Positions 5,213 to 63,936 of a stretch of 64,000 bases of DNA are shown here, one piece after another. Location: the NCBI RefSeq assembly GCF_021869535.1, contig NW_026262712.1:28520001-28584000 (forward strand), in the 5' to 3' direction. The position numbers were made by a program, and so were the translations under genes. The notes under the pieces were generated by a model, which did no database searches, was not told the DNA's origin, and worked only from the letters and a program-made list of their open reading frames with translations. This DNA is from Mytilus californianus (taxonomy: Eukaryota). Within the stretch, counting starts at the first letter, position 1. Each line of letters opens with the position of its first letter.

Positions 5213-6877
5213 TTAGTTAGTGACTTCATAAACTGAACATTCCTTTCCGTGATCAGTCATAACAAGAAACTTATTCTTAGTCGGATGGAAAGCGATATCA
5301 CGTGGGGTTACAAGATTTTCTAAAACTGGTTCCTTGTATCCTGTAGTCGTGTTTATTCGTACAATGGAACCTACTTCTTTGTTGGAAGTACATGCATATA
5401 ATTGCCCCTTCTCATCGACGTCTAGTCCTGTGATCTCATTGTCTCTTTTCAGAGTGTAGGGAATACGACTTATTGAGCCACTTTCAGTCATATGTTTAAT
5501 TGATTTGCCATCAGAAATAAATATTCCATTATGGCCTTCCATGCACATAAACTCCAGCTTAATTTTAGTTTTTAAAGACTTAACAATTGTTTGATCTTCA
5601 TTTAAGACAATAACTTCCCGAGAGTTGGTATTTGAATAAATCGTGTCATTGTTAACCTTGACACAATTGAAACAGCCGCTTGTCTGGGTAAACCAAGGGT
5701 CCTCTGTGAAGTTCTCTTTATTAATTTTGCAGAGGCCTACGGCGGGAAAAGATGCATAAATATCATTTTTCAAATCACAAGTTATGTCTAAAGGGCAATA
5801 TTTCACTTGTGTTGATTGAACACTGGCGCTGGCAATGTCATACATACTTATCAAAAAGTGGCATGAAAATACTATGCGATTATCTAAAGTGAAACAAGCA
5901 GAGTAAATTCTTGTAATTTTGAGCTGAGAACAACTGATCTTCTGATCAAGAAGGACTTTTCCTTGTTGAAAATGATAGGTGTGATCTTGCTGACCATTTA
6001 GTGGTCCTGGAACTGTAGTTTTACTCTTTTCTATTTTTATTCCAGATATTTTAGCTAAAATTGGTTTAATCTTTCCTATGAAGTCATATGAAGACGACCG
6101 AATTTCGTATGCTGTTAATTTCTCCTGAAATTTATCTAAGAAAGCTTCCTCCTCACCTTGTAAAAGATCTAGCGTCTTAACGGCTGCGAGAATTCTTGTT
6201 TCGGAAGCATGCTCTGCAAGCGTTTTAATAGCGGTTTGCCAGGTCTCCGATTTAATTTTTCTTGTTGTCAGATCTTTAATATTCTGTTCAATTTGGTCTT
6301 TGCATTCTTTATCAAGGACATCTACTTTTTTATCGATTACCTGTTCCAGTTCATCTAAGAACCCGATAAGTTCCTTTCGAATATTTCTTAACTTTTCTTT
6401 ACATTCGTCTTTCTGGACAGATACTAAACTCAAATTGTTCTTGTAAGCCTCGACTATTCTACCTATTATAAGCGAAAAATCTGACATTCGCCGTTTTAAA
6501 TCCTCTATCGATGTTCCCGTTCTCACGCCTTTTGATGCTTTTTCCATTGACCTGACATCTTTGCATGCGCTATGCAATTCTCGAAGACAAAAAGCGCAAC
6601 AGATTGTATCATGTTGTACACAAAAGAATGAAAGTTTCTGATCCTCGTGGATATTACAAATTTCTGGAATGTCTAAAATCGATGAATCTACTTTTTCAGC
6701 TTCAAGGATTGAGATTGTCTTGTGGTTCGCTGTTATTTTCCCTTTACGGTGAAATTTCGCGCACTCCACACAGAGATATTCAATGCAGTCGCTACAACAC
6801 GAAACTGCTTTTTGATTTTCTCCATCTCGATTACATGGCTCACACCTCTGTACATGTATGTTGGAGGCGCCAGCCAT
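5213..6877 (-). CDS. RING-less TRIM-like protein A (554 aa): two B-boxes, coiled coil, NHL-like beta-propeller
   Basis: Open frame from MAGASN. B-box1 CEPC...CSDC...LCVEC...H...NH, B-box2 CNIH...FCVQHDTICCAFC...H, heptad-rich middle region, repeated beta-blade motifs at the C-terminus. Acceptor tttgttgtag at 6917-6916 just upstream of the ATG, conserved in all paralogues. Confidence 0.92.
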   Translation of the reverse strand: MAGASNIHVQRCEPCNRDGENQKAVSCCSDCIEYLCVECAKFHRKGKITANHKTISILEAEKVDSSILDIPEICNIHEDQKLSFFCVQHDTICCAFCLRELHSACKDVRSMEKASKGVRTGTSIEDLKRRMSDFSLIIGRIVEAYKNNLSLVSVQKDECKEKLRNIRKELIGFLDELEQVIDKKVDVLDKECKDQIEQNIKDLTTRKIKSETWQTAIKTLAEHASETRILAAVKTLDLLQGEEEAFLDKFQEKLTAYEIRSSSYDFIGKIKPILAKISGIKIEKSKTTVPGPLNGQQDHTYHFQQGKVLLDQKISCSQLKITRIYSACFTLDNRIVFSCHFLISMYDIASASVQSTQVKYCPLDITCDLKNDIYASFPAVGLCKINKENFTEDPWFTQTSGCFNCVKVNNDTIYSNTNSREVIVLNEDQTIVKSLKTKIKLEFMCMEGHNGIFISDGKSIKHMTESGSISRIPYTLKRDNEITGLDVDEKGQLYACTSNKEVGSIVRINTTTGYKEPVLENLVTPRDIAFHPTKNKFLVMTDHGKECSVYEVTN

Positions 6878-7227
6878 TCTTTTTAGGACGCCAGGTATGT
6901 TTGGGGAATTTTTTTCTACAACAAACAATTTTAAGTGATCAAAAGTACATGTTTTTATATATTTTTTTTAATAACACGCATTGAAAGATGTTTTAACAAT
7001 ATATTGCACTTATACTATTTGTTAAATGAATATTTGAACTTTAATAAGTTCTTATGTACCATATTTTGTTGTTTATAGTATTTATATTGAAATGTTTTGT
7101 CATATAAACGACCACGGCAATGTTCTAATATACACCTACGGCTGAAATATGCTGGCGTATGATTTGCCTATTGAGTGCAGAATGTGGAAGCCGGTCATAG
7201 GTTTTCAATAGTCGATTCCCTAAGCTT

Positions 7228-46453: not shown

Positions 46454-46981
46454 AATTGGAATTTAAACATCTAATTCTATGAATCAAGGCATACATTATT
46501 TTCTGAAGTTTCGGATGGGAATATAACAATAGTATTTACAATTAAGAATAAATAGTCCACATTATTTGATTCTTTATCTGGCTGTATCCACTCGTTTTAA
46601 AATTTTATATTAAAATGGTAAAAAGATATAGGAGATGCATATATGAGGGGGGAAAGGGACACCCGTATGATGATAAACGATACAATGTTGTTAACTTTAA
46701 CGATGAATATTTTGCTCTATATATCGCTAATTATAAAAATGACGATAATTTCTAGGTTCATTCGACGCTAACAGAAGCGTAAAATGAAAGAAGAGGTCGT
46801 TTGACGATTGCAATTAAATACCATTTCTACAGCACAAATGTAGCCAGCCAGTATAAGCTTATAGCAGTATACACGTATATACATCTTAATTCGTAATTCA
46901 TACACATTCAAAATTTCTCTTAATATGTTTGTAATGGAAAATATATATTTCTTTTCTTGTAGAACTGGAAAAAAAGATAGT

Positions 46982-48676
46982 ATGGCTGGCGCCTCAAACA
47001 TGAAGTGGTGTAAAGCATGTGGTAGAGACGGAGAAGATCAAAGAGCTCATTCATGGTGTAGTGACTGTTCAGAACCATTGTGTAAGGAATGTCTAAAATT
47101 CCATCGGAAAGGAAAAACAACAGAAAACCACAAAACAATCCAAATCCTCAAAAGTTTTGGTTCATCGCGATCGGTTATCGAGATTCCAAAAACATGTCAT
47201 ATCCACGATTATAAGAAATTTTCTATCTATTGTATACATCACGATCAAATCGGTTGCGCCTCTTGTTTACGGGATCTGCACATCGAATGTGAAGAAGTAA
47301 TTTCAATAGAGAAAGCTTCACGAAGCTTGAAGAGAACCGCGATTGAAGATTTACAACGGCGAATTTCAGATTGTTCGCTTATAATAAGAAAAATAATCGA
47401 ATTGTATCAGAAAAATTTGAGTTCAATATCTGAACAGAAAAACGAATATAGAGAAAAAGTAAGTAAAGTTCGAAAGGATCTTAACACGTGTTTGGATGAG
47501 CTAGAACAAAATGTCGATAGAAAATTAGATGATTGTGATACAATATGCAAGGACGAAATTGAAAAAAGTATTAAAGATTTGACCACTAGAAAAAGTAAGT
47601 CAGAGTACTGGCACACTGCTATTGAAACGTTAACAGAAGATGATGATGATGGTTCCCAATCCAGAATCTTTGCAGCAATCAAGACGATAGACCATTTACA
47701 AGTCGAAGAAGAATCATTCTTGTCAAAGTTTCAAGAAGATTTGGTGGCATATGAACTGTTCTCGTCTCCATTTGACTTTTTAACAATTAAATCAATGCTA
47801 GCCACAATAGCTGATATAAAAATAGAGAAAATGAAAACTACAGTTCAACAATCATCGAATACCCAACAGATTGACACCTATATCCAACAAGGAAAAATCC
47901 AACTTCTTCACAAAATTAGCAGTTCTAAATTGGAAATGACAGCATTTGGCAAAGCCTGTCTTACTATGGACAATCGTATAGTTTTTGTCGGATACCCACT
48001 TCGTGTTTATGACATTAGTAGCTCCAGTGTTCACACAATACAAGTAGAATCTATATGGTCATCAGACATAACTTGTGATTTGAAAAACAATGTTTATGTG
48101 TCTTTTCCTGGTGACGGTATTTACAATATTGACATTAAGAACTTGAACGAAGGCCATCGTATCAACACAAAACAGGGTATATATCAACGGGTCAAACAGA
48201 AGAATGGCTTACTTTATTCAACCTGGGATGACGAGATCGTACTTTTCAATCAACAAAAAACTATAGTAAAGAAGATCGTACTTTTCAATCAACAGAAAAC
48301 TATAGTAAAGACCTTGGAATGTATATTCAAGCCAGTATTTATGTGCGTCGAAAACTGCGATGGAATATACATTTCTGACGGTAAATCAATCATACGTATG
48401 ACTGAAACTGGTTCACATAATATTGTTCCTACCATAATGGAGATGGGTGAAGTCATTACAGGACTAGACGTAGATGGGCAAGGGCAGTTATATGCATGTA
48501 TTTATACCGATGTAGTAGGAACAGTTGTGCGAATAAACACGACTACAGGATACAGGGAACCAGTATTAGAAAATCTCGTAACTCCGTGTTATATCTCTTT
48601 TCATCCGACTAAGAATATGTTTCTTGTTATCACTGATCGCGGAAAGGAATGTTCAGTTTATTTTGTCACAAATTAA
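46982..48676 (+). CDS. RING-less TRIM-like protein C (564 aa): two B-boxes, coiled coil, NHL-like beta-propeller
   Basis: Intact ORF from MAGASN, paralogous to gene A along its full length. Acceptor ttttcttgtag at 46961-46962. Carries a 13-aa internal duplication and a DDDD insertion. Confidence 0.92.
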   Translation: MAGASNMKWCKACGRDGEDQRAHSWCSDCSEPLCKECLKFHRKGKTTENHKTIQILKSFGSSRSVIEIPKTCHIHDYKKFSIYCIHHDQIGCASCLRDLHIECEEVISIEKASRSLKRTAIEDLQRRISDCSLIIRKIIELYQKNLSSISEQKNEYREKVSKVRKDLNTCLDELEQNVDRKLDDCDTICKDEIEKSIKDLTTRKSKSEYWHTAIETLTEDDDDGSQSRIFAAIKTIDHLQVEEESFLSKFQEDLVAYELFSSPFDFLTIKSMLATIADIKIEKMKTTVQQSSNTQQIDTYIQQGKIQLLHKISSSKLEMTAFGKACLTMDNRIVFVGYPLRVYDISSSSVHTIQVESIWSSDITCDLKNNVYVSFPGDGIYNIDIKNLNEGHRINTKQGIYQRVKQKNGLLYSTWDDEIVLFNQQKTIVKKIVLFNQQKTIVKTLECIFKPVFMCVENCDGIYISDGKSIIRMTETGSHNIVPTIMEMGEVITGLDVDGQGQLYACIYTDVVGTVVRINTTTGYREPVLENLVTPCYISFHPTKNMFLVITDRGKECSVYFVTN

Positions 48677-52841: not shown

Positions 52842-52947
52842 CATCTTCGCTAGCCAAGGGTTACAATCCAGTCCCCTCCTCTTCGAGAGAGGGAAGAGGA
52901 GAGGGAAGAGGAGTGGACTGGATCGTAACCCTTGGCTAGCGAAGATG
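52842..52947. mobile_element. 106-bp hairpin MITE with a 9-bp TSD (Mutator-like)
   Basis: CATCTTCGCTAGCCAAGGGTTAC.ATCCAGTCC is mirrored at the right end. GGTAAAAAA at 52833-52841 and 52948-52956. Confidence 0.88.
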
Positions 52948-58637: not shown

Positions 58638-58953
58638 GACTCGCAACTCGACTTTCGTAACTCGCAACTCGACTTTCGTAACTCGCAACTCGACTTTCGT
58701 AACTCGCAACTCGACTTTTGTAACTCGCAACTCGACCTTCGTAACTCGCAACTCGAATTTCGTAACTCGCAACTCGACTTTCGTAACTCGCAACTCGACT
58801 TTTGTAACTCGCAACTCGACTTTTGCAACTCGCAACTCGACTTTTGTAACTCGCAACTCGACCGTCGTAACTCGCAACTCGACTGTCGTAACTCGCAACT
58901 CGACTTTCGTAACTCGCAACTCGGCCTTTTCAACTCGCAACTTGCAACTCGAC
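58638..58953. repeat. CpG-rich 21-bp minisatellite, about 15 copies
   Basis: Unit TCGCAACTCGACTTTCGTAAC, itself three related 7-mers. Confidence 0.97.
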
Positions 58954-59220: not shown

Positions 59221-59365
59221 ATGGATGAGAAGGAATATGTACTTAAAAATTGCAAAAATATCCTGAAGATTTAAGTGAAAATGAAAAAAAAAGAATAAGA
59301 GCAAAAAAGGACGTATTTGTAATCAAAACACACGATGGAATGGATTGTCTGTATATAAAAACTGA
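59221..59365 (+). pseudogene. Relic N-terminus of a Ginger/GIN1-like transposase or integrase (tentative)
   Basis: After a ttcag acceptor: MDEKEYVLKNCK, frameshift, then YPEDLSENEKKRIRAKKDVFVIK...DG..CLY, resembling the YP..LS..EKR..R.K...F....G.LY segment that precedes Ginger/Gypsy integrase zinc fingers. Confidence 0.45.
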
Positions 59366-59773
59366 GGTTCAAAATAACTGGAACAAAATCACTAGTGTAA
59401 TCCTCCATGGTAGAAAAGCACTAGTGTAATCATTCCTGCATGGTTCAAAAACACTAGTGTGAACATTCCTTGGATGAAAAACACTAGTTTACTTTGTCCT
59501 TTTATTACATAAATCAACTATGCAAGTTTCAGTTCATTCAAATACCCCCCCCCCCCCCCCCCCCCTCCAAAAAAAATACCAAGCCCCATTTTTTATATAT
59601 TTCCCCTGTGACCACTATAACACATGTGTTATAGCAGTCTCAGATTTCCCGTTCAAAAATCAAAAAACCCTCTTTAGAATCTCATGATGTGTGGTGGATA
59701 TTTTACACTGGACCCAGATTAAAAAAAAACTAGTGATTTTTAAAAACACTAGGAATTTTCATCCTCCGGATAT

Positions 59774-62700
59774 CACTGTGTATCATCGCCACCGGAAATT
59801 GGGTACTAACGAAGAGGAGAGAAATGAAAAAAAAGTAAACAAGGTAAGAATTCATTCAATTTAAAGCATTTCTACTGATTTGACGAGGGTACCGCTTAAG
59901 AAATGATTTTCTGATATATAATTCTTTAAATTATTAGGCCGATAAGTACAAAATTATGTCAAGATTTTGTGTTATACTCCAAAACTTGCCACTTAGTACC
60001 CGAAAATTTCGAGGTCGATCGTCCTTTGTCGCCCCATTGGCAAGATATTCAACTATTTTTCATTATTTTTTCAGACACACTTTAAGATTATTATAGTGTG
60101 GCATCATATTTACTGAGATTTGTAGTCAAAAAGATGTTTTTTTTAAGAATATAGACCATAAAAAATAAAGTCTAGGGTACGGCAACTTGCTCGTGTTGAC
60201 AAATTTACTGTATGGCAACTTGTATTCAACTGTATGGCAACTTGCTAATTTTAAAATATTTATTTGCCGTCCTTTTAAAGAAAATAAAGTATTAAGTTCA
60301 TATATCCAATTATGCATTTGATAAAAATACAATTCGCTTGACAGCATTTAAGATGTATACACAATATAAGGCTTGAACACAGTCCTATTAGTACATCTTT
60401 TACATACTCGATTTATACAATATGAATACGGCATATATACAAAAGCTGGCAAATGTTGCAACTTTCGAAAAGGCATGTCACTGTTTCACTGACCTATTTT
60501 TATGCCCCTGACGTTATATGTGTCTGTCCCCGGTGAGGAACATGTATAATATAGCGGCTGTCGTAGGTTGCTGTCTGACATTTGTTCATGATTTTGTCAT
60601 AAATCAGGCAATTTTGATACAGTATATGGGTTTTGTTCATTGTGAAGTGTATAATGACCATTAGTTGGTCAAATCCGTTTCATTTGGACTTTGTTGGATA
60701 GTCCTCTCACTGAAAATCATTCCACATCTCCTTATTCAATTAATGTTATTGTCTTATTTGTAAAAGGCAGATACAGCCAATATATTATAATAAAGAAATG
60801 AACAAGCTCGGTGGCTAACACTGTTTGAATTTTTAAAAATATCAACCTTATATTAATCATTTTTGGAAAGAATGAAAGAAAAATCCGATACCAGGGATAC
60901 AAATCCCGCTGTGGCTTCGGCATAAACTATTTATATAAACTTTTTACTTGAGAATAAAGATGACCTTGTATGAAGTTTTTTTGGTTGTCATTTTAATGCT
61001 ATATACTTATAAATACAATACACAAAAGCTAGCATCTTCGACTTGTAAGTTAATGAAATATAATCAAATAACATCATGATAAGGACAGGTTGAAATATTT
61101 TTTAATTCCTGATGATGCATACTCATAAATTCTTTTGGAAAAATCTATGAAAATTTAAATGTTGATTTGAAAGCGTTCTTTTATTTATTTGCCCTCGTAA
61201 ACAGTTTTGTTAAAATACCGAAATCGGTAAATTCTTATCGTGAAAGAATAAGTCGGGTACACCTTTTTACATTCAGTCGTGCTTTAGTTGCAATTTTTTC
61301 TTCTTATTAAGAAAAATGATTTTAAGCACTTTTTTCTTCTTATTAAGAAAAATGATTTTAATTTTAGCATCTATCTAAAGATTATATTGTTTACACACAC
61401 CCAAAAATAGGGCTAACTGTTGATTTTGAAACACTTTGAATTTATATCCAACCAAACAGATAGGCCGAGATCCATACATTTATAAGTTTCAAAACAGAGA
61501 AGGTGTGTTTGAAAACAAATAATCACGTGCTGCTACATGTATATCTTTTAAAGCAAATGCAAGTCTTACTTGTATTAATTATATAATTTTAATTGGCACA
61601 ATATCACATTAAAATTTACTGAGAAATATTATACATAGTAATCATGAAAATTTAAGTACATTGAGAATTCGGACTAATACACTCCATCTCACTACCCCTC
61701 CATCTACTCCTTTAAGTTTAGGCCAAACAGCCTTAGCAAAAGTCTTTTATTCTTTTATCCCTGTAAATAAAAAGATTGAATGAATTTACTTAAACTAAAA
61801 AAAATACAATCTTATTTTCGATAAGAAACAAGAAAATTAATTCGAAACACAATTCATGATTTATTTCTCCTAATTTTCAATGAAAAAAAGGTATTTTCTT
61901 CACTTTTCTTTCAACAAATTATTCGTTTCAGAAATTAAAAAATAAACAACGAATTTTACCCAGGACATTCTTAAAGTGTCTGTCCGAAGTCACGAGCCTG
62001 TACATGTAGTTCGGTGGTTGTCGTTGGTTCATCGCTATCATATGTGTTGTTTTTCGTACATTGTTTTGTTATGAGTTAGGCCGTTAGTTTTCTTGTTGAA
62101 TCCTTCCACATTTTTCATGTCGGGGCTTTTTATAGCCGACTATAAGGTACGAGTTTTAGTTGTTGAAGGCTGTACGATAGCATATAATTGCTTACATACA
62201 ATTTATTTGACCCTGGTGAATAGTTCTTATTTGCAATCATACCACATCTCCACTGTTTATATTAAAAAAAAAATTCTTTCAAGCACCAAGGAAGGATGAA
62301 TGGTCGTTTTTTTTTATTGAACTTACAAAATTTCACCCTGACAACAAATAAGACAACAGTCGTTAGTATTATAACGATATATGAATGTATTTAGGATAAT
62401 ATGGTTGAAAAAAACCTTTTTGTCTTTAAAAACACAAAGTCGAATAGAGGTACGCAACGACGACTTCTGAACAAAAGTAACGGCATATATTTTATAATAT
62501 TTGATATGTAGTTTATTTTGTATATTTGGAAGCCGGTAAAGCTTTAATATGGACAAAATATCGTCACTTGATATTTTCTAAACAGTGATTAATTTCATCT
62601 TTAAATTACAATATATTGCAAGACGCCGTACAGACAAAAGTTGTTATTCTGCAATTCGCCGTACAACGTTCTGCAATTCGCCGTACAATAAACAAACAAT

Positions 62701-63088
62701 ATGTTGATCCATATTCTTTAAAAAACATCTTTATGACAACAAATCTCAGTAAATATGATGTCACACTATCATAATCTAAAAACATGTCTGGAAAAATAAT
62801 GAATAACAGTTGAATATCTTGCCAATGTGGCGACAGAGGACGATGGACCTCGAAATTTTCGGGTACTAAGTTGCAAGTTTTGAAGTATAACACAAAATCT
62901 TGACATAATTTTGTACTTATCGGCCTAATAATTTAAAGAATTATATATCAGAAAATTATATCTTAAGCGGTACCCTCGTCAAATCAGTAGAAATGCTTTA
63001 AATTGAATGAATTCTTACCTTGTTTACTTTTTTTTCATTTCTCTCCGCTTCGTTAGTACCCAATTTCCGGTGGCGATGATACACAGTG
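59774..63088. mobile_element. Non-autonomous Transib/RAG-like DNA transposon (3315 bp, about 385-bp TIRs, 5-bp TSD)
   Basis: Starts CACTGTG, ends CACAGTG, with GATAT on both flanks (59769-59773, 63089-63093). TIRs have about 8 mismatches in the first 280 bp by manual alignment. No transposase ORF inside. Confidence 0.85.
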
Positions 63089-63357
63089 GATATGGCGGAA
63101 TCTATCCACTGTTACATATACACCATACAGTGACCAATGGTGGCTAACTTCCGTTACATTCGGTCTTTTCTGGATAGTTGTCTCATTGGCAATCATACCG
63201 TGGCCACACCTCCTTATTTGTATATTGATCAACATGGGGAAAAAACTGAAAATGAATATTGAGTCGTTTGTAATATTTATTATGACTTAATATACGCATG
63301 ATGATTTTTAATATATTTAGAAATTTACAACATTACATTTTTACGTTACACTTGTAG

Positions 63358-63476
63358 GAATTGTCGTACGATGTCCAACTTTGCAACGAAGTTTTAATGT
63401 ACTTTATGGACAGGAAATCTGATGGTGCAGATTCAAACATAAATGAAGTCTACAAAAACCTATTTGTAGGAAATGA
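63358..63476 (+). CDS. Exon of an atypical dual-specificity phosphatase (DUSP3/DUSP13/DUSP29-like)
   Basis: Acceptor cacttgtag at 63356-63357, donor GTAAGT at 63477. Translation ELSYDVQLCNEVLMYFMDRKSDGADSNINEVYKNLFVGN(E). Possible starts at 63397 and 63406. Confidence 0.8.
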
Positions 63477-63936
63477 GTAAGTAAAAATATTGTCCTTTGT
63501 TTTTTTTCATTATACTTCTTTTTTTTTTTTTTTTTTTTTTCCTTTTTTTTTTTTTAGGTTAACACACATTGTTCAACTATAGGTAACTGGCCATATGTCA
63601 AGCTCTAAACTCTCCGAGTTTAGTACATAAGTTGTGAGTGAATTGAACAGATTCATAGAATACTATCATGCTTTTACAATTTTACACTGCAAAATACGTG
63701 CAGAGATTATTTACTTCATGTATGGTTCAGATCATGGCAGTCCTGAAATCATTGATTACTGAAAATGCGCCACCACATCTACAAATTCATACATGTAGCT
63801 AGAAACTGAAGCAAGTGGTAACAATTTCAGTGACACGTTTTCGGAGGATACCAAACAGGCGTTGTTTAAGTGAATAGAACAGCTAAAACAAAATGCAATC
63901 ATATTACAATGATTTACTCCATATTCCTTTTTTCAG

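What the first reader, a model, noticed from the sequence alone, without database searches (positions are those of the whole stretch)
59769..63093. Transib/RAG-like transposon with exact RSS-heptamer ends and unusually long TIRs
Seen: a 3315-bp element reading CACTGTG inward from both ends (plus-strand right end CACAGTG, the V(D)J heptamer consensus). Its TIRs are about 385 bp with only 1 mismatch in the first about 128 bp, and loose subterminal GTA(T/C)GGCAACTTG repeats follow. The GATAT duplication fits 5 bp only; 2, 3 and 4 bp do not fit, which argues against CACTA/Chapaev. Known: CAC termini plus a 5-bp TSD characterise Transib and RAG-like transposons, the relatives of RAG1/2. Inference: a fairly young non-autonomous member, implying a Transib or RAG-like transposase elsewhere in this genome. 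No nonamer at 12/23 spacing is visible and the two ends are symmetric, so it looks more Transib-like than ProtoRAG-like.
Basis: partly seen in the sequence, partly recalled or inferred. Interest (0 to 1): 0.8.

Follow-up and report, generated by a model that had tools for sequence, protein, structure and literature searches.

The report
Gene-less Transib-type jumping element in mussel
This is a 3.3-kb gene-less copy of a high-copy cut-and-paste transposon in a mussel genome; its ends and 5-base target duplication fit the Transib group (relatives of the antibody-gene enzyme RAG1), which is known in molluscs, and its enzyme was not identified here.

Summary
Element 59774-63088 (3315 bp) has inverted arms of 369 nt without gaps (about 385 with gaps). 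Both ends read CACTGTG inward, and an exact GATAT duplication flanks it. Each end carries three subterminal repeats. It contains no gene, Pfam domain or Rfam RNA.

Contigs from four public runs of three coded organisms show the whole 3.3-kb unit is repeated roughly 100-300 times relative to the unique flank. It is therefore a real, amplified, non-autonomous family.

CAC ends plus a 5-bp duplication are the published Transib/RAG-like signature. The end does not fit the protostome RAG-like consensus and has no nonamer at 12 or 23 bp. It is therefore Transib-type rather than RAG-like.

- The inward heptamer differs from the RSS consensus CACAGTG at position 4.
- hAT5 elements also make 5-bp duplications.
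- I could reach no other copy, no empty site and no transposase, so superfamily assignment rests on one copy's hallmarks (confidence about 0.65).

The scan has noted the same signature before on other DNA of this genome: at least 13 unchecked first-reader notes, plus RAG1-like transposase genes.

Verdict: a new member of a known kind, of modest interest.

The parts
59769..59773 (.). Left copy of the 5-bp target site duplication, GATAT
   Evidence: Read directly; identical to 63089-63093; chance about 0.0017
59774..60142 (+). Left terminal inverted repeat arm, starting with the heptamer CACTGTG (59774-59780). The first 128 nt are nearly identical to the right arm
60177..60244 (+). Three left subterminal direct repeats with core GTAYGGCAACTTG, start-to-start spacing 33 and 22. 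This is the degenerate inner continuation of the arm
   Evidence: families D1, D5; alignment
60245..62613 (.). Non-coding interior. It holds pieces of a hyper-abundant short repeat (about 60640-60736 and 61976-62251) and a 36-bp tandem duplication (61290-61361)
   Evidence: No ORF of 100 aa or more; no Pfam family reaches its curated cut-off; no credible Rfam match; depth and contigs
62614..62688 (-). Three right subterminal repeats. Read as the reverse complement: GTACGGCGAATTGCAG x2 and GTACGGCGTCTTGCAA. Spacing matches the left side, but the motif differs at its centre
   Evidence: families D2, D9
62720..63088 (-). Right terminal inverted repeat arm. The plus strand ends in CACAGTG (63082-63088), which is CACTGTG read inward
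63089..63093 (.). Right copy of the 5-bp target site duplication, GATAT

Best explanation
This is a non-autonomous copy of a high-copy cut-and-paste DNA transposon family in a mussel genome, most likely of the Transib superfamily. It encodes nothing itself.

Inferred mechanism: a RAG1-core-like DDE transposase made elsewhere in the genome binds the conserved terminal ~130 bp of each arm. It nicks at the 5'-CAC boundary and releases the element by the nick-hairpin route established for Transib and RAG. It reinserts the element with strand transfers staggered by 5 bp, which produced the GATAT duplication.

The three subterminal 13-16-nt repeats per end, about 400-470 bp inside, are candidate accessory binding sites. 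They may also be only the decayed inner part of an old inverted duplication.

Shown here: the anatomy, the lack of coding capacity and the high copy number in several organisms. Inferred: the superfamily, the enzyme and the chemistry.
For: - Anatomy: exact 5-bp duplication and perfect CAC...GTG boundaries. The 36-nt end is unique to the two arms.
- No coding or RNA signal: no ORF of 100 aa or more and no Pfam or Rfam match.
- Copy number: single contigs matching the arms and interior have depths of 620-1638 in X3, against 5.8 for the unique right flank. In X18 they are 654-1325 against about 6-16. Summed depth steps up 5- to 40-fold exactly at 59767. The whole unit is therefore repeated on the order of 100-300 times, in three coded organisms.
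- Terminal conservation: a contig over 59847-59979 differs from this copy at 2 of 133 bases. Interior contigs differ by 4-7%. The arms diverge from 0.8% to 11.5% moving inward. This is as expected if only the terminal ~130 bp is constrained for transposase binding.
- Literature: Transib is defined by 5-bp duplications and CAC-heptamer ends (PMC1131882). Hztransib duplications are invariably 5 bp (PMC4840297). Hztransib has long TIRs (PMC1852546). CMC elements make 2-4 bp duplications (bioRxiv 10.64898/2026.08.26.747230).
- Leads not checked by me: earlier notes report RAG1-like transposase genes and many CAC + 5-bp elements in this genome.
Against: - The duplication length comes from a single copy.
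- No transposase with matching ends was seen.
- There is no nonamer-like block at 12 or 23 bp; the only A-run lies 45-46 bp from the heptamer.
- The duplicated pentamer is AT-rich, whereas Transib targets tend to be GC-rich.
- Long graded arms with subterminal repeats look more like CACTA-type architecture than like most Transibs, which have 13-40 bp TIRs.
- hAT5 elements also make 5-bp duplications.
- In this same genome other lineages (Sola-like) are noted with CAC termini.
- The literature warns that duplication length and end sequence support but cannot override transposase-based classification.
Confidence: 0.65

Rival explanations
1. It is a non-autonomous element of another branch of the wider CACTA/Mirage/Chapaev/Transib clade, for example a Chapaev-like or still unnamed lineage. 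That branch would happen to make 5-bp duplications.
For: The clade shares CA..TG ends and makes 2-5 bp duplications (PMC12730594). Long arms with subterminal repeats resemble CACTA-type architecture. Duplication length is labile even within Transib. Earlier notes describe CMC-type transposases in this genome (unchecked).
Against: Described CACTA, Mirage and Chapaev lineages make 2-4 bp duplications, and here only 5 bp fits. The CMC element noted in this genome has CGCGGG ends and a TA duplication, unlike this one.
Confidence: 0.15
2. It is a non-autonomous element of a different superfamily that uses CAC ends in this genome, such as the Sola-like lineages noted earlier or an unclassified one. 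The 5-bp duplication would be its own trait.
For: Earlier first-reader notes report Sola-like transposases between CAC...GTG termini in this genome (s1-287965, s1-328215; unchecked).
Against: One of those two notes (s1-328215) reports a TATA/TA duplication; the other states none. Here a 2- or 4-bp reading requires unequal ends.
Confidence: 0.1
3. It is a non-autonomous hAT5 element. hAT5 is a hAT subgroup that makes 5-bp instead of 8-bp duplications.
For: hAT5 makes 5-bp duplications and occurs in invertebrates (PMC9004415; PMC12730594). hAT elements often carry subterminal short repeats (my own knowledge).
Against: According to the legend of Figure S7 in PMC1131882, the third base of hAT 5' termini is always G. 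Here it is C on both ends. hAT TIRs are usually short.
Confidence: 0.05
4. It is not a mobile element but a local inverted duplication, and the flanking pentamer match is chance.
For: Only one copy could be read directly.
Against: The whole unit is repeated on the order of 100-300 times in runs of three organisms, with a sharp step at the left boundary. The chance of the 5-mer match is about 0.0017.
Confidence: 0.02

Closest known systems
Transib superfamily, non-autonomous families (Transib-N type; Kapitonov and Jurka 2005, PMC1131882) and Hztransib of Helicoverpa zea
   Same: 5-bp target duplication; 5'-CAC...GTG-3' ends with an RSS-like heptamer; non-autonomous copies far outnumbering autonomous ones. 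Hztransib (3518 bp) is also described as having long TIRs (PMC1852546).
   Different: The heptamer is CACTGTG, not CACAATG. There is no A-rich nonamer at 23 or 12 bp. The arms are about 385 bp, graded, with three subterminal repeats. The duplicated pentamer is AT-rich. The transposase is not identified.
Protostome RAG-like (RAGL) transposons of oysters and ribbon worm (Martin et al. 2020, PMC7204232)
   Same: CAC ends, 5-bp duplication, mollusc host, and non-autonomous derivatives exist.
   Different: The consensus end CACTWMCAAACKTYKBB has a conserved AAA at positions 8-10. This element reads CACTGTGTATCATCGCC, with TAT at 8-10. RAGL similarity between ends is confined to about 13-15 bp, and copy numbers are low.
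CACTA/Mirage/Chapaev (CMC) transposons
   Same: CAC(T) ends, subterminal repeats, and membership of the wider clade that shares the RAG1-like catalytic core.
   Different: CMC elements make 2-4 bp duplications. Only 5 bp fits here.
hAT5
   Same: 5-bp target duplication; found in invertebrates.
   Different: hAT ends have G at the third position and short TIRs. This element has CAC ends and about 385-bp arms.

Membership tests
Transib superfamily (non-autonomous member) | 5-bp target site duplication | tested here: met
   GATAT at 59769-59773 and 63089-63093; other lengths do not fit. One copy only.
Transib superfamily (non-autonomous member) | Ends begin 5'-CAC with an RSS-like heptamer (consensus CACAATG) | tested here: met
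   CACTGTG inward on both ends: CAC invariant, 5 of 7 to the Transib consensus and 6 of 7 to RSS CACAGTG.
Transib superfamily (non-autonomous member) | A-rich nonamer-like block about 23 (or 12) bp after the heptamer | tested here: not met
   Best 9-mers near these spacings match 3 of 9 or fewer. The only A-run is at spacer 45-48. Hztransib also has little or no nonamer similarity, so this feature is not universal.
Transib superfamily (non-autonomous member) | Shares its ends with an autonomous element encoding a RAG1-core-like DDE transposase | not testable with these tools
   No eukaryotic genome collection is searchable. Metagenome, viral and prokaryote scans were blank. Earlier notes of RAG1-like genes in this genome give no termini.
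Transib superfamily (non-autonomous member) | Preference for GC-rich targets | tested here: inconclusive
   The pentamer GATAT has 1 of 5 G+C but sits between CCG and GGCGG. One site only.
RAG-like (RAGL/ProtoRAG) transposons | Protostome end consensus CACTWMCAAACKTYKBB with AAA at positions 8-10 | tested here: not met
   Positions 5-8 and 10 disagree; 8-10 read TAT.
RAG-like (RAGL/ProtoRAG) transposons | Convergent RAG1-like and RAG2-like genes between the ends (autonomous copies) | tested here: not met
   No ORF of 100 aa or more and no Pfam domain inside. Not required of a non-autonomous copy.
CMC (CACTA/Mirage/Chapaev) | 2-4 bp target site duplication | tested here: not met
   Flanks ...GGATAT and GATATGG... 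give no 2-, 3- or 4-bp duplication abutting the perfect inverted repeat.
hAT5 | hAT-type ends with G at the third position | tested here: not met
   The third base is C on both ends; criterion from the legend of Figure S7 in PMC1131882.
hAT5 | 5-bp target site duplication | tested here: met

The most novel reading that the evidence does not exclude
This abundant family, with recently inserted copies, could be the non-autonomous partner of one of the unannotated RAG1-like transposons that earlier agents reported in this mussel genome. Those are the 18-kb element and the two-gene RAG1-like plus chromodomain element. Its long graded arms, with subterminal repeats that differ between left and right, might reflect end recognition that goes beyond heptamer plus nonamer. 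If so, hundreds of natural insertion sites would be available to study a recently active RAG1 relative in a protostome.
Probability: 0.15. Interest if true: 0.6.

Novelty: new member of a known kind. Interest (0 to 1): 0.3.

Why it matters
Transib and RAG-like transposons are the living relatives of the enzyme that assembles vertebrate antibody genes. Molluscs are already known to carry them. A family with hundreds of copies, some apparently recent, suggests that a transposase of this type, if the classification holds, was active not long ago in mussels. Its insertions would be a ready data set for target choice and end recognition. One large survey of mollusc genomes found only a single Transib transposase (PMC10294476), so such families may be under-described in bivalves. 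For this window it is ordinary repeat annotation. The copy lies in repeat-rich DNA about 11 kb beyond the last B-box ORF of a TRIM-like cluster and disrupts no recognisable gene.

Tried and rejected
1. Other copies. Exact-pattern scans with the 22-nt end and with a conserved 21-mer of the arm found nothing in metagenome contigs, viral contigs or prokaryote genomes. These collections hold no mussel DNA, so the blanks say nothing about the family.
2. Copies via predicted proteins. I used the 95-aa ORF inside the right arm as a handle to fish out other copies. No word matches were found.
3. Orthologous locus. I looked up the nearest large ORF (TRIM-like, 46925-48673) to find this locus in other assemblies. 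It is not on record. No called gene lies within 10 kb of the insertion.
4. Paralogous empty site. The flanks have no other copy across the insertion point in the window.
5. Empty allele in reads. The one joint reported at the boundaries (59772 to 63094, X8) carries 9 other letters and has depth 374, about 11 times the unique depth. It comes from other copies of the host repeat and is not a clean empty site. Low-depth joints were not listed, so presence or absence of an empty allele is undecided.
6. Earlier notes by sequence: blank.
7. Martin et al. supplement: no end matching CACTGTGTATC.
8. Rejected target duplication types: MULE (9-10 bp), Tc1/mariner or pogo (TA), piggyBac or Kolobok (TTAA), PIF/Harbinger (3 bp) and ordinary hAT or P (7-8 bp). 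None fits the flanks. These lengths are from my own knowledge of the superfamilies.
9. Typing in a Transib or RAG1 protein from memory to search for a mussel partner: not done, because such a sequence would be unreliable.

Full report
**What is in the sequence**

The plus strand reads ...TCCTCCG GATAT CACTGTGTATCATCGCC... at 59769 onward and ...GGCGATGATACACAGTG GATAT GGCGGAATC... at 63093. The element spans 59774-63088, which is 3315 bp.

- The repeat finder reports arms 59774-60142 and 62720-63088, 369 nt and 95% complementary.
- A gapped alignment extends recognisable similarity to about 385 nt, and more weakly to about 470 nt.
- The terminal 36-mer occurs at these two places only, with 0 expected by chance.
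- The arms differ at 1 of the first 128 positions, at 5 of positions 129-250 and at 13 of positions 251-363. That is 0.8%, 4.1% and 11.5%.
- The GATAT match has a chance probability of about 0.0017 at this base composition.
- With the ends fixed by the perfect inverted repeat, no other duplication length fits.

Each end carries three short direct repeats about 400-470 bp inside, with the same start-to-start spacing (33 and 22) on both sides. The motif differs between the arms. It is GTAYGGCAACTTG on the left. On the right, read as the reverse complement, it is GTACGGCGAATTGCAG or GTACGGCGTCTTGCAA. The two ends are therefore not fully symmetric.

Read inward, both ends are CACTGTG. The RSS consensus CACAGTG appears only when the right end is read on the plus strand. 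The inward heptamer matches the RSS consensus at 6 of 7 positions and the Transib consensus CACAATG at 5 of 7.

**No cargo**

- No ORF inside reaches 100 aa.
- The seven longest ORFs match no Pfam family at or near its curated cut-off.
- The only Rfam match scores 25 bits against a gathering score of 90.
- The interior holds a 36-bp tandem duplication (61290-61361).
- It also holds pieces of a hyper-abundant short repeat at about 60640-60736 and 61976-62251. The same repeat forms the right flank at 63103-63241.

**It is a repeated family**

I laid Logan contigs of four public runs on 59350-63500. The runs were X1 and X3 (coded organism A, two studies), X8 (organism B) and X18 (organism D).

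- The unique right flank (63242-63500) has depth 5.8 in X3, 10-12 in X1, 34 in X8 and 3-13 in X18.
- In X3, single contigs inside the element have depth 1638 (59847-59979), 866 (60049-60251), 785 (60580-60797) and 620 (60932-61100).
- In X18 they have depth 1325, 832, 838 and 654.
- Arms and interior are thus repeated on the order of 100-300 times the unique depth, in all three organisms.
- Summed depth steps up 5- to 40-fold between the bin ending at 59766 and the one starting at 59767, which is the left boundary.

The tool warns that summed depths are not copy numbers, so these ratios are rough.

**Terminal conservation and age**

- The abundant terminal contig differs from this copy at 2 of 133 bases.
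- The abundant interior contigs differ by 4-7%.
- Together with the inward gradient between the arms, this fits a family in which only the terminal ~130 bp is held constant across subfamilies.
- One mismatch in 2 x 128 terminal bases points to little change since this copy inserted. My estimate is about 0.4%, with a Poisson upper bound of about 2%. Conversion between the arms cannot be excluded.

**Classification**

Published hallmarks:
- Transib elements are flanked by 5-bp duplications. Their ends carry a CAC-initial heptamer, a 23-bp spacer and an A-rich nonamer (PMC1131882).
- Hztransib duplications are invariably 5 bp, and its ends resemble the heptamer but hardly the nonamer (PMC4840297).
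- Protostome RAG-like transposons have 5-bp duplications and the end consensus CACTWMCAAACKTYKBB, with a conserved AAA at positions 8-10 (PMC7204232).
- CMC elements make 2-4 bp duplications (bioRxiv 10.64898/2026.08.26.747230).
- The wider clade shares CA..TG ends and 2-5 bp duplications (PMC12730594).

How this element compares:
- It meets the 5-bp and CAC criteria.
- It fails the nonamer criterion. The only A-run lies 45-48 bp from the heptamer on both arms.
- It fails the RAG-like consensus, reading TAT at positions 8-10.
- Long arms are unusual for Transib, where TIRs of 13-38 bp are typical. They are not unprecedented, because the original Hztransib description says it 'has long TIRs' (PMC1852546).

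Two cautions:
- hAT5 elements also make 5-bp duplications (PMC9004415). However, hAT ends carry G at the third position (legend of Figure S7 in PMC1131882), and this element has C.
- A 2026 preprint shows that duplication length and end sequence vary even among true Transibs. It argues that they support but cannot override transposase-based classification.

**What could not be done**

- None of the searchable DNA collections holds mussel DNA. Scans of metagenome, viral and prokaryote contigs were blank.
- A protein word search with an ORF from the arm was blank.
- The nearest large ORF is not on record in the contig index.
- The window holds no second copy and no second copy of the flanks across the insertion point.
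- The single read-laying run listed no clean empty allele. The one joint at the boundaries carries nine extra letters at about 11 times unique depth, so it comes from other copies of the host repeat.
- As a result, I tested neither the family-wide duplication length, nor the empty site, nor the identity of the transposase.

**Earlier notes of this scan**

These are unchecked leads, not evidence.
- The genome is described as a Mytilus mussel.
- At least 13 first-reader notes on other DNA of the same genome describe CAC-ended elements of 1.3-5.9 kb with 5-bp duplications. Several are 3.4-3.9 kb with CACTGTG ends and long arms.
- Follow-up agents reported RAG1-like transposase genes: an 18-kb element and a RAG1-like plus chromodomain pair.
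- Other notes describe Sola-like transposases between CAC termini, which keeps a non-Transib partner possible.

**Verdict**

The most likely reading (about 0.65) is a non-autonomous Transib-type transposon. It would be moved in trans by a RAG1-core-like transposase that recognises the terminal ~130 bp and integrates with a 5-bp stagger. The chemistry is inferred from the family and was not shown here. Transib and RAG-like elements are already known in molluscs, so this is a new member of a known kind. It would become more interesting only if it is tied to one of the unannotated RAG1-like transposons of this genome.

Noticed in passing
window 63103-63241, 61976-62251 and about 60640-60736: Pieces of one hyper-abundant short repeat ending ...GTCTCATTGGCAATCATACC. 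Summed contig depth is about 10^5-10^6 against 6-34 for unique DNA. One piece forms the right flank of the element and two lie inside it. Contigs of about 12-15 times unique depth bridge the interior into the 61976 piece, so that piece was already present in an amplifying subfamily.
   Followed up: partly
window 62269-62824 and the arm ends 59767-60044: In run X8 (coded organism B) these parts have summed depth 290,000-750,000 against 34 for unique DNA. That is 10-100 times higher, relative to unique depth, than in organisms A and D. A shorter derivative or satellite built from the ends and the right subterminal region may have amplified in that lineage.
   Followed up: no
window 59772/63094: In X8 a contig of depth 374 joins the left flank to the right flank with 9 other letters (AAGTACACC) in place of the element. 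The two flanks therefore belong to one older repeat into which this element inserted. That repeat's other copies differ at the site, so the contig does not serve as an exact empty site.
   Followed up: partly
window 61290-61361: A 36-bp tandem duplication (97% matches). An X18 contig of depth 838 lacks one unit (joint 61289 to 61326), so the duplication is specific to this copy or its subfamily.
   Followed up: partly
window 58639-58942: A minisatellite of 14.5 units of 21 bp (93% matches) lies 0.8 kb left of the element. It creates spurious ORFs of 100-115 aa on both strands.
   Followed up: no
window 5216-6928 (-) and 46925-48673 (+): Long ORFs with B-box zinc fingers (Pfam PF00643, E 1e-8 and 4e-7). 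No transposase domain was found in the ten longest ORFs.
   Followed up: partly
window 52842-52947: A near-perfect hairpin: 43-nt arms, 95% complementary, 20 nt apart. Not examined.
   Followed up: no
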